NCBI RefSeq assembly: GCF_032062105.1
Contig: NW_026920084.1
Coordinates: 62,001-126,000, forward strand
Length of the DNA: 64,000 nucleotides
DNA from: Saccostrea cucullata
Lineage: Eukaryota
Direction of reading: 5' to 3'
The position numbers and the translations under genes were made by a program. A model generated the notes under the pieces. That model saw only the letters and a list, made by a program, of their open reading frames with translations, made no database searches and was not told the origin of the DNA. Below, in pieces: positions 42,251 through 50,561 of this stretch (position 1 is its first letter; the number at the start of each line of letters is the position of its first letter).

Positions 42251-45200
42251 ATGGACGACGATCAACGAAGAGCATTTGAATTGGCAACTTCTGGACATAA
42301 CTTGATAATTACTGGACAAGCCGGGACAGGAAAAACTTTTCTTGTCAAACAAATTGTAAGGTATTTAAGACAACTGAAGAAAAATGTTGCTATTGTATGT
42401 TCTACCGGTATCGCCGCGACTCATTATGGTGAATTAAGGGCACAGACATTGCATAAATGGGCCGGGATAGAGGATGGCAGACACTTGAACGAAGAAATAA
42501 TACACTTAGTAAAGACTGATGAAAGGTTCAATGTTGCTAAGAAAAATATTGAAAATGCCGAAATACTAATTATTGATGAAATTTCCATGATTAGCGCAAA
42601 AATCCTACATCAAGTTCAGTTACTTTGTAAAAATGTCAGAAATTCAAAACTCATCTTTGGCAATATCCAGGTGATACTTGTGGGAGACTTTTATCAACTC
42701 CCACCTATTTCAAACGAACTTTTTGGAGATCTTGGAAATCATTGCTATAGATTACCTTGGTTTGAAAATTATTTCCCACACAAAATTAACTTAAATATTA
42801 TCCACAGACAGGAAGATCAGCTCTTGATTCAATGTATTAATGAACTTGAAATTGGAAATCTCTCAGAAGATTGTGTTGCATTTCTTCTTTCTCTTGATAG
42901 ACCAATACAAAATGAGAAATCATGTGTACACTTATTTGCTAGAAATTTAGATGTAGACTTGTATAATTACAACAAATTGCAAGCACTTCAAGGGGAGTTA
43001 AAGGTGTACAAAGCTGAGGATGAGGGCTCTCAACACTATCTCAACAAATTTCTGGCCCCTAAGAATCTAGGATTAAAACTTGGTTGTCCTGTTATGCTGA
43101 TTAAAAATTTAAGTGACACATTAGTGAATGGACTTTGTGGAACTGTGACAAATTTATGTAATGATTCTGTAGATGTGAAATTTATGGAAAATCATAGTAC
43201 ACCAATTACAGTGTCCATTTCAAGAGAAATTTTCACAATATTTGACCCTGTGGATAAAATTGTTTTGGCGAAAAGAGTACAAATGCCCTTAAAAGTAGGA
43301 TTTGCTATGACAATACACAAATCCCAGGGAATGACCTTGAAAAATTTAGTTATTGATTGCACAAATTGTATCCAGCCTGGGCAACTTGGAGTTGCCATAG
43401 GCAGAGCAGTATCTGTTCAGGGTTTGAAAGTAATAAACTTCCATAAAAATCTATGCAAAAAACATCCAGGTCATGTATACAATTTTTACGACAGTTTTTC
43501 AATTGGCATTGTGAAATGTGATCTAAGTTGTTGCAGGGATAATGTTGACATTAGTACTCTGACAGCAGATACTGGTCATAAATCTGAAGACACTGATGAT
43601 GCTATCGAGTCAAAAGTTTTGAATGAGGATTCAGAATTTTCTGATTCAGAGATTGAAGAATTAGAATTCATAGACAATATTCTTAGTGATCCTGGTCAAA
43701 ATGCACTTCCTGATCAGTTTTCACAATCAAAACTCATTTTGGACTCTGCAGTGCAGAAATATTCTGACACACCAGTAGAAACAATTATTTTCAGTTTCAG
43801 GGATGCAATCTGCAAAAGTTATAAATATTTTGATGACTGGTTTCATGAGCAATTTTCAATAATGGAAGACATAGGACTGAATACTTTTCCTGAAGGGGAA
43901 ATGTCTTTTTCTCAGAAGCATAGAAATGATTATTTTATTAGATTCAACAAGTATCTTAACTCAGATGATTATGAAAAAAGTGCAAAAACCTTGCTTAATT
44001 ATTATGAGCAAAATTCTGAAGGGCCAGCATTTCAGCTTTTAACTGCAGTTATGTTTCAGATAGAGAAAGAATTTTTTCTTCAGCTTTCTTCCTATCTTCA
44101 GTTATCTGCCCCTGAGCCTGTAAAAAAGCTAACTGTTCAGTCTGACCTGGAAATGGACTCTGCAGGAAAAGGGAAATTAAGGTACATAAGTGGATACATA
44201 TTAGCCAAATTGAAACATACTTTGTCAAAAAAAATCAGAAATATATTATTCACCAAAGGTAAAGAAACAGAGTTGTCAAGATTTCAATCACAAATGGAAA
44301 TTCTCAATTCATTGTGTACTTCATTTGATCATTTAAATGCTACAGCAGTAGAGCCGGAGACCCTACTTGAAGTTAAACACAGACAAAATGACAGAGAGAG
44401 TCTCACTAATGTGTCTGATTTGACCTTTAGTTTTTTCCAAAAACTTGAATTACTATGCCGTGAAAAACTTACTCATGATAAGCTAGTTGATGATAGAAAA
44501 TATTTATTCAGTTCTATTAAGGGAGAAATACTCGATAGTTCTTATATTTTTGACACATGGATTCAGTGTGTTGCGAAGTCGAGAAATCAATTGAATGAAA
44601 ATCAAACTGAAGATATTTCTGATCTTTTGTCTTCAATGGTCATGACCTGTGATAGTTACACAGAGATTTTCCAAGCAGTTGTCTCTTTATTCCTCAAAGT
44701 AAATTTAAGTCAGTTTCGAAGAGATTTCTTAACATTTTTGAAAAAAGAGAAGAGTGTCGCACTGCGTAAAAAGGTCATGAAAAGGTCAAAAACAGTTGTG
44801 AAAACTTTCAACATGAAATTTTTCTCAGAAGATGACTCTAGCAATAAAGAAGTTTCATTATTAAGGTTAAAATCTGAACTTTTACAAAATGAAAAATTCT
44901 TTACTGAACATTCATTTACCAAAAAGGATTTGATCTCAATATGTCAGCATTTTAATTTGAAAGCTACTATGAAGCAAAAGAAGGATGATATCATAAAAGT
45001 GCTTGTCGATGGAATTCTAGAAAATGTTCATGCATCCAATCAATCTGTACTTGACACTGAACAGGCAGGACCTAGTAACTCTCAACCTTCGTATGCTGAT
45101 CTGACTCCCGCTGGCTCTGTATCATCTGGACCTGGCCTTTCACCACAACCTAGAGAAAGAGGTAAGAGAACATCAAGCAAAGGAAAAGGTAAAGGGAAGG

Positions 45201-45295
45201 GCAAAGGAAAGAAAAGAAAAACATCTGCTGACAGAGATTTGAACATGACAGAGGAAGATCTTACTAGGTATGTCATCTGGTCTGAAATTTATTAA
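42251..45295 (+). CDS. Transposon-encoded PIF1-family (SF1B) DNA helicase, ~1014 aa, with a long C-terminal extension
   Basis: GQAGTGKT, STGIAA, TLHKWAGI, IIDEISM, FGNIQVILVGDFYQLPP, HRQ, PVMLIKNL..LVNG, QMPLKVGFAMTIHKSQGMTL, GQLGVAIGRA. The C-terminus has YISGYILAK, a SAP-like motif and a KGKGK NLS-like tract. First ATG at 42251. Confidence 0.92.
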   Translation: MDDDQRRAFELATSGHNLIITGQAGTGKTFLVKQIVRYLRQLKKNVAIVCSTGIAATHYGELRAQTLHKWAGIEDGRHLNEEIIHLVKTDERFNVAKKNIENAEILIIDEISMISAKILHQVQLLCKNVRNSKLIFGNIQVILVGDFYQLPPISNELFGDLGNHCYRLPWFENYFPHKINLNIIHRQEDQLLIQCINELEIGNLSEDCVAFLLSLDRPIQNEKSCVHLFARNLDVDLYNYNKLQALQGELKVYKAEDEGSQHYLNKFLAPKNLGLKLGCPVMLIKNLSDTLVNGLCGTVTNLCNDSVDVKFMENHSTPITVSISREIFTIFDPVDKIVLAKRVQMPLKVGFAMTIHKSQGMTLKNLVIDCTNCIQPGQLGVAIGRAVSVQGLKVINFHKNLCKKHPGHVYNFYDSFSIGIVKCDLSCCRDNVDISTLTADTGHKSEDTDDAIESKVLNEDSEFSDSEIEELEFIDNILSDPGQNALPDQFSQSKLILDSAVQKYSDTPVETIIFSFRDAICKSYKYFDDWFHEQFSIMEDIGLNTFPEGEMSFSQKHRNDYFIRFNKYLNSDDYEKSAKTLLNYYEQNSEGPAFQLLTAVMFQIEKEFFLQLSSYLQLSAPEPVKKLTVQSDLEMDSAGKGKLRYISGYILAKLKHTLSKKIRNILFTKGKETELSRFQSQMEILNSLCTSFDHLNATAVEPETLLEVKHRQNDRESLTNVSDLTFSFFQKLELLCREKLTHDKLVDDRKYLFSSIKGEILDSSYIFDTWIQCVAKSRNQLNENQTEDISDLLSSMVMTCDSYTEIFQAVVSLFLKVNLSQFRRDFLTFLKKEKSVALRKKVMKRSKTVVKTFNMKFFSEDDSSNKEVSLLRLKSELLQNEKFFTEHSFTKKDLISICQHFNLKATMKQKKDDIIKVLVDGILENVHASNQSVLDTEQAGPSNSQPSYADLTPAGSVSSGPGLSPQPRERGKRTSSKGKGKGKGKGKKRKTSADRDLNMTEEDLTRYVIWSEIY

Positions 45296-45878
45296 CTCCA
45301 AATTTAGGTGCAGAAAATATTTAAATGTTTCTAATGTTAATTTTAATGTTAATTCAGTGGATTTTCCATATGAAAATTCTGTTTTTTGTAATGTCATAAT
45401 TTTACAGAGAAAAACCATTGGAAAAAATATTTAACATTTTCTCAAGAATAGTAAATGCATGATTAGTATTTGTTGTGGAAGCATCTCTCTGGTAGTTTAT
45501 ATTCAAGTTTTCTCAAAATAGGGTGGGACCAACAGAAGTGTCAGATCAAAGTTGCACATAGGAGCTGGAGAGAAATCCTGATTAAGAATTAATAGCAAGA
45601 CCAGTGAGTCAGGTGAGGATTGTAGCCCATGGACCTCATGTTATAATTCATGTGAGAAATACTAGTACTGTATACACAAAAGAGGCCAAGTCTTCTGTGA
45701 CAGTATTACATTGATAGGTTGGCCATTATCTATATCAAAAATTAAAAAATATCTGCAAATTCATTACTTAGATAAGTTTCTATTTACACTGTATATGTTT
45801 CTATGATGTACCTAAAATTTGTCTATAAATACTTTTTATGATTGATTGTGAAATACATGTATAATAATGTACTTTATA

Positions 45879-48350
45879 TTATTTCAGAAACCTTTTAGTA
45901 TGCCATATCTTTCCTTCTGAGCTTCTTTTTGGATGTTGTTCTGGCAATTCAGCACCTCCCGAGGCTCCCCCAGTGTTTGATTTCCTCGATACAGAGGCGT
46001 GTCCTAGAATAACAGAATTCATTGTGTTGCAGTATCCTAGGTAGGTAGGATTGGTATTAGCCCCATTATGTAGTGTCCTCTGTTGACAAAAAACATTTTC
46101 TATAACATCACTGTTTGTTCTTGATGGAATAATGGAGGCATTTGATTTTTTCAGTTTGTAAAGACAGAGCTCCTCAAAACCAAGCACAGATGATATAATG
46201 TCTTGTCTAGTCTGGTGTGAAATTAAATGCTTTTCTTTATTTTTTATTGTTTTGTTGTTTTTTATGCTATTCTCCCACTGTACGAACCAATCCATTGCAT
46301 CATGATTTTCTTTCAAACGATCATCACTTACATCAGTGACAGGTCTAGTATCTCTGAAGTTTTTAATGAGGACACTAGTACATTTTAGGAGTTTAACTGT
46401 CACATCCAGTTGTGACCCTTCTGAACCAAGACTATCTTGATAAAGTTCCATGAGATGTAGCATATTCCCATCTAGTACATCCTCAGCTAAGTGATTCCTC
46501 ATTTTGGCCTCAGGTGTCATAAACAAGTGTTCTTGGGATAATTTATGGTGTACTGGAAATGCATGAGATGATATGTCCCATATATAAGCTTTCCTAAAAT
46601 GATTCCACTCAATGTACTTATCACCGAGCATTAAATGTCTCTTGCAGCTAGCATCAGTACCACTTTTCAATATGTTATTGCGAATTTTTTTTATCACATG
46701 GGAGATGTCCATTATGAAAAAAATTTGGGGGTTATCTAGACAATATATGTTTTTGAATGAGCAGGTTACTGGGTTCATTGTGCTAAATTCTGGTAGTAAA
46801 AGATTGAATAAGTCTCTGTTGGACTGAGCCCCATCGGTACTTATATACTGTATTTTAAAACCAAAACTTGATAACATATTCACGGATTCCCAAAGCAACA
46901 AGTAAAGTTCATGTCCTGAGGCTGTAGTTGAGGGAAAATGGGCAAATGGGAATCTGAACCCTGTAAACCCCAAAAACAGGAGTTGGAGGGCATGTGTTGC
47001 TAAAGGTAACTGTCTTTTACTTGACGAGATCTGGTTAAAAACAATGGACTCAGGAGTGCATTCTGAGAATCCAATTAATTGAATTTCACCATCTTTTTTC
47101 TTGAATTGTAGATCTGATTGAACAGACATTTCGTCAAATATTAGGCCGCCCTCTAACCCCTCTGGTGGAATTTTCTTCAGCTGGGCTTCATTCCTCATCC
47201 AATGAAGCACTTCTTTAGAGAATCCTGCCTCTTGATGAACTTCATTTTTAACTCTTTGTAGGAGTTTTTGAGAGGGAAGAACCAAAAACTTGCTATTTCT
47301 TAAATCTGTGTAACCACGAGGGCTTCTACACCACAAATTTAAACATAACCGAACTACATCCCTATTCCACCTTCTCCCATTGGGATGTCTATCAAGTGCT
47401 ATTTTTTGTGACTTTAAAAATGTTTTCATTTTGTTAGTACAATCAGGAAAAATTTTGCTCAACAGTTCAGACATGTCTTTATTGTCTGCTTCACACAATG
47501 TAACTGTATTATGCAAATCATCACTTTCCACACAGAGTTCACTTGGATTGCGTCTGCAATTATTTGTATTTTTGAAGAATGATTTTTTTTCAACGTTTGA
47601 TTCAGACTGTTCTTCATTTTTATCAGATTGATATTTAGTTGATCTCTGGAGTTTTTTACAAAAGGTACAGATAAATGACATATTTGTTGCAGCTTGAATT
47701 GGTAAAACATTTATACAGTTTTTTGAGCGGAAGCAAATACTGCTGAAATTTTCATCACCAACTTTGGACAAGTGCTCTTCAAAAAAGGTAGTTTTCTTTT
47801 TATTTTCCCCAATTTTCTCAGCCCCTTTGCAAAAAGAAAGGTGTCTTATAATTTGGAATATTGTGCTGAAACTGTAATGTTCATTTTGTTCATTGATGCC
47901 AAGACTTGCTGGTTTAATAGTTCTTCCACGAATATTCATATGCCAAATTTTATCACTTTTCAGAGAAATTTCAATCATTACTTTGTTATTGTTTATTATG
48001 TCACCAGTAAAATGACCTAATTTAATACAGTCTGCAGTCTTTGAAAGCAAAAAAAAATCTTCTGGGATAATTGAACTTATTTCACTGAAAGGAACATCAG
48101 ACAGTGGGGATTTTCTCCACGAGATTCCCAAATATCTCTTTGTCAATTTTGACCAGTCATCTTTTGAGCGAACTTGTATTATTGTGACATTTTCAAATAA
48201 CCTCTTTATTATATTTCCTACTGCAAGACCAGTCACTGTAGCCTTGAATTTTGTTATAATGTCCTGTAAATCAACGTATTCAGTGCCTGTGGAAGCTTCA
48301 AAATTTTCTAGTAACCAGATGTATAAAGAAGAAATATTTTTTTCACTCAT
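45879..48350 (-). CDS. P-element/THAP9-like DDE transposase, 823 aa
   Basis: RW...CLNLWCRSPRGYTDLR..LVLPS, LIFDEMSV (D), STDGAQSNR (D), MDISHVIKKIRN (D-x2-H), KMRNHLA (GTP-binding insert), SDVIENVFCQQR (E), NPT. Confidence 0.9.
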   Translation of the reverse strand: MSEKNISSLYIWLLENFEASTGTEYVDLQDIITKFKATVTGLAVGNIIKRLFENVTIIQVRSKDDWSKLTKRYLGISWRKSPLSDVPFSEISSIIPEDFFLLSKTADCIKLGHFTGDIINNNKVMIEISLKSDKIWHMNIRGRTIKPASLGINEQNEHYSFSTIFQIIRHLSFCKGAEKIGENKKKTTFFEEHLSKVGDENFSSICFRSKNCINVLPIQAATNMSFICTFCKKLQRSTKYQSDKNEEQSESNVEKKSFFKNTNNCRRNPSELCVESDDLHNTVTLCEADNKDMSELLSKIFPDCTNKMKTFLKSQKIALDRHPNGRRWNRDVVRLCLNLWCRSPRGYTDLRNSKFLVLPSQKLLQRVKNEVHQEAGFSKEVLHWMRNEAQLKKIPPEGLEGGLIFDEMSVQSDLQFKKKDGEIQLIGFSECTPESIVFNQISSSKRQLPLATHALQLLFLGFTGFRFPFAHFPSTTASGHELYLLLWESVNMLSSFGFKIQYISTDGAQSNRDLFNLLLPEFSTMNPVTCSFKNIYCLDNPQIFFIMDISHVIKKIRNNILKSGTDASCKRHLMLGDKYIEWNHFRKAYIWDISSHAFPVHHKLSQEHLFMTPEAKMRNHLAEDVLDGNMLHLMELYQDSLGSEGSQLDVTVKLLKCTSVLIKNFRDTRPVTDVSDDRLKENHDAMDWFVQWENSIKNNKTIKNKEKHLISHQTRQDIISSVLGFEELCLYKLKKSNASIIPSRTNSDVIENVFCQQRTLHNGANTNPTYLGYCNTMNSVILGHASVSRKSNTGGASGGAELPEQHPKRSSEGKIWHTKRFLK

Positions 48351-48415
48351 TTTGAATACCTTTGCTTAATTTCATCTCTTTCCTTATTTTTTGCGCTTTA
48401 AAACAACCGCCGAAA

Positions 48416-48960
48416 TATTTCCCGTACTTTTTTTCGCAAATTTCGGCTCTTTCCGTTGGTTCTATTACATTCGGAACTCTCCGAGTACAGAAGTGGAGTT
48501 ATCGTTCCTGTAGTAAATTACTACGAGGTGTCGTTTTTTCGTCACTTCCGTAATTTCTGCTTTGACATTTCTGGATTTTTGGCGTTTGACGGTTAATAAA
48601 GGGATAACAGAATAATGTTTGGTTGATAAAATGGCACGATTTACGACAAAAACCTCTACCGAATTAAGGCATGACTAGACATTTTGGTGACATGTAATAG
48701 GTATATGATATTTTAGGCCCGATATTCAAGAGGGGTCCGAATTAACAACCCGAAGTGACTTACCTTCTCTATTTTATAATACCCTGGTATGACTTTTTTC
48801 GTAAATCGTTAAATCTATGTTATTTTTTGGGTTTTTCATATGGAATACATTGTAAATAAGTACTAGAAACATAATTCTTGAGAAAAAAAGAAAAAAAAAT
48901 ATTTTGACCAGGGGTGTATATTGGGAGGGGGGGGGGGGGTCCTGTCCACAAGTACCTGTG
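48416..48960 (-). repeat. Right terminal inverted repeat (545 bp)
   Basis: Reverse complement of 41704-42247. Confidence 0.95.
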
Positions 48961-50561
48961 ACACACTTTAAATGCTTTACATCAAAGTCCAAATTCTACT
49001 TGCAGAGTTACGTAGCATCAGCGTTAATATGCAGTCTTTCATCATAAATATTTGATCTAGATATGCAAACAATTACATAATCCACGTAAATTGGATGGTC
49101 ACTTGAAGTGGGTTTTACGAGATGGAGTGATTGTTGAGAACTCTTCATATATTCCTTTCAAAAGACATCTCTCTTTGAATATTCTAACATTTCAAGTAAA
49201 TATTGTCAATATTTCATAAGTTGCTGGATTAATATTTGAAAAGATTTCTATAAGCCCTCTCATAACACTCTCAGCAGGTTGCCCCTTAATGATAAAAGTA
49301 AATTACCTCAGATCGAAATGAGAACCCTACGCTACCAATACATTTGTTGACATAAATGGCTTTCTCTTGTCAATAAGGATCCATTATTCTAATAGAAAAA
49401 AATTACTACGTTAGACTTTTTTCCCCCCAAGATTCATCATATATATAATTTTGGGATCGGTGTTAGGTCAGCTTTAATATAATTTTTCTTTGCCCTCCTC
49501 CGACTCAGGATTAATGTTTGGGGTCGGTAGTTTTTCCTTAGAAAACATCATTGTTGAAATTTTAAATGCATAAATATAGTTTCCAAAATGTTCATAAAAT
49601 TTTGACTCGAGCCATTTTAACCAGCCGGTTGGAGATAGCAACAGTAGCAAAACATTTCTTTAAAGGTGGTCTTACTAATGAAATTATGGTAACATCATAT
49701 TACGGTTTATCTACATATTTTGGAAGCAGAAATCCAAGCAGTTTGTATGACGTCCCTTAGAGAAAATTTTCAATCAAACTGAGAAGCCGGTTCAGGACTG
49801 CAAATCTAGACCTGCACTCGGTACTTCCGATGAGGGGTCATTTTCAATCGCTCCCACCATAGGCACTTAGGAGCTGGAAACCCCACCTCCTACTTTTCAT
49901 ACCCCGCTTGGAAAGGAGGAGGGTATAAAGTGATCTGGATGCCTATTATAGGGATCACTATTATAGTGACCCTCCCAAAAACATTATGACTTTATTATAC
50001 CATTATACCTTCGATTTACGTCGCTGCTTTTCTGTCGCTCATTTCGGGTATTATTGTATTTTATGCTTTTTTGTCGTGTTAGAAATGGTATCCGCTATTA
50101 TACCATACATGTATAATCTATTATAATAATCCTATTTCTAGGCAAGCGTATGTTCTTTGAAAGATATTTTCATGAACGATCTCCAACATTGACGTCGGAA
50201 TGAGAATTAAAAGCTGGTTTCGCACCGTTGAAAGGTTAATAAAAAAAAAAGTATACCAAGAATAGTTGTGAAATACATCCAATTTTATAGGATATCATTC
50301 TGGAAGCGGGAGAAAGCTAAAAATACAAGAAAAAATATCAAAATTGAGCGACAAAAAGAGCCGCGGTGTAAATCGAAGGTTTTTACAAGGTTTTGGATCT
50401 GTAGCTCTCTGCTTTATTTGTCCGAGTTTTCTCAAGCTACAGTTTTGCAGCTATAGTCCCCTTTCTCATCCTTGTCGCAAAGTAACTTAGTATACGAAGC
50501 ATAACAGGGACAGCCTGGGGAACCAAAGAAATAGGCTATCACGCTCCAATCGCATCATCTC

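What the first reader, a model, noticed from the sequence alone, without database searches (positions are those of the whole stretch)
44150..44790. P-transposase C-terminal domain appears relocated onto the helicase (split transposase)
The transposase ORF ends ~70 aa after the catalytic E/NPT motif, without the C-terminal domain of P/THAP9 transposases, which as I recall it has a Y-I-A-G-Y-x-x-x-K motif followed by an 'RgGL..pS...f' segment. The PIF1 ORF instead contains LRYISGYILAKLK (44183 on) followed by QNDRESLTNVSDLTFSFFQKLE...REKL and a helical tail. Inference: the transposase CTD has been moved to the second protein and could dock the helicase on the transpososome, making an obligate two-subunit transposase.
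Basis: inference. Interest (0 to 1): 0.88.

Follow-up and report, generated by a model that had tools for sequence, protein, structure and literature searches.

The report
Split P transposase carried on helicase
A recently active jumping-DNA family in shellfish keeps its cut-and-paste enzyme in two genes, with the enzyme's DNA-gripping tail domain fused to a DNA-unwinding helicase, which suggests a two-subunit, helicase-carrying version of the classic single-protein fly P transposase; the partnership itself is not yet shown.

Summary
The relocation is supported. Window 41704-48960 is a young P-superfamily DNA transposon (545-bp TIRs, 8-bp TSDs, about 8 near-identical copies) with two convergent ORFs. 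The transposase matches Drosophila P transposase only up to the RNase H/CTD border and stops 72 aa after catalytic E751; all 75 aligned relatives are equally short. The 44147-44800 segment of the PIF1 ORF has no sequence-level hit, but its model (pLDDT 95) ranks the Drosophila P transposase CTD first among 48,161 chains (6p5a_B, Z 10.6, rmsd 2.6, 118/118 residues; next Z 7.0). P/THAP9 transposases also take the top two ESM Atlas rows (TM 0.59, 0.65; next 0.38). The split is family-wide: 48 of 54 transposase loci in this genome have a CTD ORF within 25 kb, always on the opposite strand, either convergent or with the transposase inside an intron of the PIF1-CTD gene. The same layouts occur in mussels, scallops and a snail, with remnants in a hemichordate. 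Sparse RNA reads show no transposase splice. Physical docking, obligacy and the helicase's job remain inferred. No paper describing this was found; Repbase was not searchable.

The parts
41695..41703 (.). left target-site duplication (ACACACTTT; 9 bp here or 8 bp plus a homopolymer T; 8 bp in other copies)
41704..42247 (+). left terminal inverted repeat, 544 bp, starts CACAGG; ends 4 nt before the ORF B ATG
42251..45267 (+). ORF B exon 1 (genomic frame stops at 45295): PIF1 helicase - acidic linker - unknown helical domain - P-transposase CTD - SAP-like - basic tail; spliced product about 1018 aa
42251..43540 (+). PIF1-family SF1B helicase with Walker A/B and motifs III-VI present
43691..44146 (+). 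about 150-aa domain between helicase and CTD, unidentified
   Evidence: no Pfam or Atlas hit
44147..44800 (+). P-transposase C-terminal domain fold (ORF B aa 633-850 from ATG 42251), ending in a basic helix (12 K/R in the last 40 aa)
44182..45064 (+). alternatively removed 883-nt GT..AG intron; its removal deletes the CTD and shifts frame (656-aa helicase-only product); donor not conserved in the nearest relatives
44915..45010 (+). SAP-like short helical motif (weak)
   Evidence: homolog P0128 hits PF18953 at E 0.0047, below cut-off
45522..45612 (+). ORF B exon 2 with the stop; further spliced 3' exons (45888-46040, 46155 on) run antisense into the transposase ORF
45879..48350 (-). ORF A: P-type transposase, 823 aa: non-THAP N-terminus, HTH, RNase H with GTP-binding insertion, D406/D506/E751 and DxxH; no CTD
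48416..48960 (-). right terminal inverted repeat, 545 bp
48961..48969 (.). right target-site duplication

Best explanation
A lineage of P-superfamily cut-and-paste transposons in marine invertebrates encodes its transposase in two pieces. ORF A is the catalytic core (N-terminal DNA-binding region, HTH, RNase H with GTP-binding insertion), cut in the flexible linker where the CTD normally follows. ORF B supplies the CTD in trans, fused behind a PIF1 helicase and usually ahead of SAP-like and PHD modules. Shown: the domain identity, its absence from ORF A, constant linkage on the opposite strand, and purifying selection. [quoted passage not shown] This tethers a 5'-3' helicase at the integration complex. 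Its most likely job is after strand transfer: stripping the stable complex and helping to process and fill the single-stranded gaps, or favouring copy-restoring gap repair at the donor site (about 0.4 for this specific role). The PHD/SAP modules would read chromatin at the target.
For: Structure: 6p5a_B ranks first of 48,161 chains, Z 10.6, rmsd 2.6, all 118 modelled CTD residues (617-734) aligned to model residues 1-201, next Z 7.0 (same). The top two Atlas rows are a THAP/P transposase (TM 0.59) and a THAP9_C cluster (TM 0.65, rmsd 2.4), next 0.38. The ORF A model matches 6pe2_A/6p5a_A at E about 4e-20; the family tail after the last RNase H helix has a median of 38 aa, maximum 79, and is disordered at its end. 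48 of 54 transposase loci in this genome have a CTD ORF within 25 kb, 48 of 48 on the opposite strand. Transposase and CTD distances co-vary over 12 elements (Mantel 0.68, p 0.0002). The family is active: about 8 full copies at 98-100% identity with distinct 8-bp TSDs. [quoted passage not shown] Both ORFs start just inside identical TIRs, which would allow co-expression.
Against: No interaction or complementation data; a two-chain model could not be run. Foldseek, Pfam, PDB-sequence and language-model feature searches gave no link to the P CTD; identity is 16% and the domain is all-helical, for which the tool warns that Z under about 13 can be generic. Co-divergence follows from linkage alone. 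Six transposase loci lacked a nearby CTD hit (partial copies or small contigs, not examined). A CTD-skipping splice form exists. One Priapulus protein has the CTD without PIF1.
Confidence: 0.66

Rival explanations
1. The domain is the P CTD, but ORF B uses it for its own DNA binding (recruiting the helicase to element ends or gaps, or acting as a regulator), while ORF A transposes without a CTD; ORF B is a helpful but dispensable accessory factor.
For: No binding data. ORF A keeps a conserved post-catalytic S-x-K-S-N-x-G motif and a basic tail that might replace the target-binding helix. A helicase-only splice form exists.
Against: The CTD makes many DNA contacts in the P strand-transfer complex; it is retained, under selection, beside 48 of 54 transposase loci across families down to 35% identity.
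Confidence: 0.22
2. A single full-length transposase is rebuilt at RNA level (trans-splicing) or by DNA inversion between repeats, so the protein is not really split.
For: The two halves are always close together; the ORF B transcript overlaps ORF A antisense; read depth is too low to exclude rare joints.
Against: Only + strand GT..AG joints were seen, none from ORF A. None of 162 CTD-family proteins carries the catalytic core, while 60 carry PIF1. Public gene models splice PIF1 to the CTD across the nested transposase.
Confidence: 0.04
3. The structural match is a generic helical resemblance and the domain is unrelated to the P CTD; ORF A simply lost its CTD.
For: No sequence-profile match; Foldseek miss; 16% identity; all-helical fold.
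Against: The exact domain predicted beforehand ranks first in two independent libraries with clear gaps, covers the whole target and matches the one domain missing from ORF A.
Confidence: 0.06

Closest known systems
Drosophila P element and THAP9/Pdre transposases (P superfamily; PDB 6P5A/6PE2)
   Same: HTH, RNase H with GTP-binding insertion, DDE triad and DxxH, CTD fold, TIRs, 8-bp TSD.
   Different: The CTD is in a separate, opposite-strand gene fused to PIF1 (+SAP-like/PHD); no THAP domain (RFX-like winged helix in homologs); TIRs of about 545 bp instead of 31 bp (fly) or 13 bp (fish).
AcademH / AcademHP DNA transposons
   Same: A DDE transposon that also encodes a helicase (PMC10045372).
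   Different: Academ transposase and 9-10-bp TSD. From my own knowledge its helicase is SF2/RecQ-like and no transposase domain is known to be moved onto it.
Two-protein transposons: PIF/Harbinger (transposase + Myb protein), Kolobok, MuDR, CACTA TnpA/TnpD, RAG1/RAG2
   Same: Transposition uses, or is thought to use, two element-encoded proteins (own knowledge).
   Different: In those the partner is an unrelated added protein; here it carries a domain excised from the transposase itself.
Helitron/Helentron RepHel
   Same: PIF1-family helicase; in this genome the next-nearest PIF1 matches after the family lie in much longer frames, mostly 1,000-2,800 aa, at 30-37% identity, probably RepHel proteins (inference).
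   Different: No HUH Rep domain, no rolling-circle ends; this element has TIRs, TSDs and a DDE enzyme.

Membership tests
P superfamily DNA transposon | DDE transposase with P-type RNase H, GTP-binding insertion and HTH | tested here: met
   PF21787 in 75/75, PF21788 in 26, PF21789 in 10, PF12017 in 7; 6p5a_A E 1e-12 by profile; Foldseek E about 4e-20; D406, D506, E751, D548, H551 invariant
P superfamily DNA transposon | TIRs and 7-8-bp TSD | tested here: met
   545-bp TIRs; 8-bp TSD in L002, L004-L007 and in the Pecten element L048; the window copy reads 9 bp
Canonical P/THAP9 transposase | N-terminal THAP zinc finger | tested here: not met
   no THAP hit; two homologs hit RFX_DNA_binding above cut-off, the window protein itself does not
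Canonical P/THAP9 transposase | CTD in the same polypeptide as the catalytic core | tested here: not met
P superfamily DNA transposon | GTP dependence and 17-nt staggered cleavage | not testable with these tools
   biochemical property
P-transposase CTD (6P5A chain B; Pfam THAP9_C / Tnp_P_element_C) | all-helical CTD fold ending in a basic helix | tested here: met
P-transposase CTD (6P5A chain B; Pfam THAP9_C / Tnp_P_element_C) | sequence-profile match to PF22824 or PF12596 | tested here: not met
   profile-profile comparison with these families could not be run
PIF1-family helicase | PF05970 and SF1B motifs | tested here: met
   E 2.5e-26, 2B domain, motifs present; activity untested
Helitron | HUH Rep domain, no TSD, no long TIRs | tested here: not met
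AcademH | Academ transposase and 9-10-bp TSD | tested here: not met
   transposase is P-type; TSD mostly 8 bp

The most novel reading that the evidence does not exclude
An obligate heteromeric, naturally split eukaryotic transposase in which the excised CTD serves as the adaptor that installs an element-encoded ATP-driven helicase (and a PHD chromatin reader) on the transpososome, giving the element its own disassembly or gap-repair motor, with splicing that skips the CTD acting as an off switch in some families.
Probability: 0.45. Interest if true: 0.9.

Novelty: new variant of a known kind. Interest (0 to 1): 0.8.

Why it matters
P transposase is a textbook single-chain enzyme. According to PMC7776569, how its strand-transfer complex is disassembled and repaired at the target has not been investigated. 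A natural lineage that severs the CTD and bolts a helicase and chromatin reader onto it makes that question testable, shows that the CTD can probably work in trans, and offers a ready-made two-component design (for example a swappable targeting module) for transposon tools. It also explains many mollusc genes annotated as 'PIF1' or 'uncharacterized' as transposon ORFs.

Tried and rejected
Sequence-level tests of the CTD link all failed: Pfam on the segment and on 116 homologs, PDB sequences with the family profile, PF22824 and PF12596 on the genome, ESM Atlas features, and Foldseek on PDB. A PHD exon in this family was sought and not found, though sister families have one. A conserved regulatory splice of the CTD was considered and not supported, because the donor is absent in the nearest relatives. 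A hidden CTD on the minus strand downstream of ORF A was not found. The middle domain gave no hit. The transposase tree could not be rooted, so which layout is ancestral is not decided. Nine paper searches found no description; two papers wanted (AcademH, the 2019 structure paper) were not held. No two-chain structure prediction was possible.

Full report
Observation. The motif LRYISGYILAKLK lies at 44177 on (Y at 44183) inside a 1023-codon + strand ORF whose N-terminal part is a PIF1 helicase (PF05970, E 2.5e-26). The convergent minus-strand ORF (48350-45879, 823 aa) is a P-like transposase (PF21787) that ends 72 aa after the E of ENVF. Both lie in one element, 41704-48960, with 544/545-bp TIRs starting CACAGG. 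About eight full copies at 98-100% identity exist in the 1.17-Gb genome, with different 8-bp TSDs; the window copy reads 9 bp. The closest named transposase homolog is from the oyster Saccostrea cucullata at 98%, so the host is probably an oyster (inference).

The transposase lacks the CTD. A 75-sequence family profile aligns to Drosophila P transposase chain 6p5a_A from residue 133 to 564 of 569 (E 1e-12). The model matches 6pe2_A and 6p5a_A at E about 4e-20. D406, D506, E751 and DxxH are invariant; after the last RNase H helix the family has a median of 38 and at most 79 residues, and the end of this tail is disordered in the model. The Drosophila CTD spans residues 566-751 (PMC10824691). 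The truncation is therefore a family trait, not damage to this copy.

The segment in the helicase ORF is the P CTD fold. Sequence methods fail, as does Foldseek. A 116-sequence alignment gave a model with pLDDT 95. Against 48,161 PDB representatives the top match is 6p5a_B, the Drosophila CTD: Z 10.6, rmsd 2.6, 118 of 118 residues (617-734) on model residues 1-201, 16% identity; the next chain scores 7.0 (repeated). In the ESM Atlas the two best rows are a THAP-P transposase (TM 0.59) and a cluster carrying THAP9_C (TM 0.65, rmsd 2.4); the third is 0.38. Helical folds can give middling Z by chance, but here the domain named in advance comes first in two libraries with clear gaps. I put the homology at about 0.93. 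From memory only, the Drosophila YIAGY motif begins near residue 629, which would be in register with model Y13; I could not see the residue alignment.

The split is lineage-wide. The CTD profile finds 911 representative proteins. Of 162 examined, 60 carry PIF1, 46 match a strict PHD pattern, none carries the catalytic core, and every one with a long N-terminus has PIF1. In this genome 48 of 54 transposase loci have a CTD ORF within 25 kb, always on the opposite strand: 33 convergent and 15 with the CTD on the transposase's 5' side. In those of the second group where PIF1 pieces were found, they lie so that the transposase sits antisense inside an intron of the PIF1-CTD gene. The nested layout recurs in Littorina, Pecten, Mizuhopecten and two metagenome contigs with similar PIF1 intron positions; the convergent one recurs in Mytilus. 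The Pecten element has CACAGG TIRs of about 600 bp and an 8-bp TSD. A hemichordate locus holds PIF1-CTD-PHD with a convergent transposase fragment. Transposase and CTD distances co-vary (Mantel 0.68, p 0.0002, 12 elements), which shows linkage, not binding. The CTD is under purifying selection (pS about 0.8, pN about 0.3).

RNA. Only 27 raw reads and one contig set were laid. All four joints are + strand GT..AG; none comes from the transposase. Three extend ORF B by a short exon to about 1018 aa and carry its 3' end antisense into ORF A. One removes 44182-45064, deleting the CTD and giving a 656-aa helicase-only product; other reads retain the CTD. That donor is missing in the nearest relatives, so it is probably family-specific. 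The low depth makes the absence of a transposase splice weak evidence alone, but strand geometry rules out cis-splicing to the CTD.

Mechanism. [quoted passage not shown] The break here falls at that linker and the basic helix is kept (12 K/R in the last 40 aa). I infer that ORF B supplies the CTD in trans and so tethers PIF1, a 5'-3' helicase known to displace proteins and assist repair synthesis (own knowledge), most likely for disassembly and gap processing after integration. Both ATGs lie just inside identical TIRs, consistent with co-expression. Confidence in the trans-acting subunit model is 0.66; the main rival (0.22) is that ORF B is a dispensable accessory that uses the CTD for its own DNA binding. 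Origin is open. An inversion of the catalytic core relative to PIF1 and CTD, or an inverted duplication with complementary domain loss, would both fit; the tree is unrooted. A Priapulus protein joins the transposase N-terminal region directly to the CTD and PHD without core or PIF1 (E 2e-23), a single case that links the two halves but may be a secondary fusion.

Comparison and verdict. It is a member of the P superfamily by core, TIR and TSD, but fails two features of canonical P/THAP9 transposases (THAP domain; CTD in cis). Helicase-encoding (AcademH) and two-protein transposons are known, but I know of none where the partner carries a domain excised from the transposase, and nine paper searches found no description; Repbase could not be searched, so prior cataloguing of the element type is possible. 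Verdict: new variant of a known kind, interest 0.8.

Noticed in passing
L053:10001-12800 (P0252, Priapulus caudatus XP_014663331.1): The transposase N-terminal region (aa 20-237) is fused directly to the CTD and a PHD finger, without catalytic core or PIF1; no TIRs were found around it, so it may be a domesticated gene or a repressor-like derivative.
   Followed up: partly
window 47541-48350 (-): The transposase N-terminus has no THAP domain; two homologs (P0041, P0091) match the RFX winged-helix family above cut-off.
   Followed up: partly
window 45888-46600 (+): Spliced ORF B transcripts run antisense into the 3' end of the transposase ORF, a possible source of double-stranded or small RNA.
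   Followed up: no
G000 contigs C22251, C21297, C11585, C383, C4904 and others: Many roughly 2-2.6-kb elements with paired ends 85-89% like the first 435 bp of the TIR: probable non-autonomous derivatives.
   Followed up: no
L005/L006 (G000:C18601:31853-46887): Two near-identical full copies inserted about 525 bp apart in opposite orientation, each with its own TSD, suggesting local hopping as known for P elements.
   Followed up: no
G000 contigs C6715, C18547, C17391, C3264: Strong PF21787 hits outside this family and without a nearby CTD-family hit: probably canonical P-like transposases in the same genome.
   Followed up: no
window 36665-40574 (+): Host gene resembling a heparan sulfate 3-O-sulfotransferase (by its translation; not tested) ends about 1.1 kb left of the element.
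   Followed up: no
window 43691-44146 (+): A domain of about 150 aa between PIF1 and the CTD has no Pfam or Atlas match; it was not folded.
   Followed up: partly
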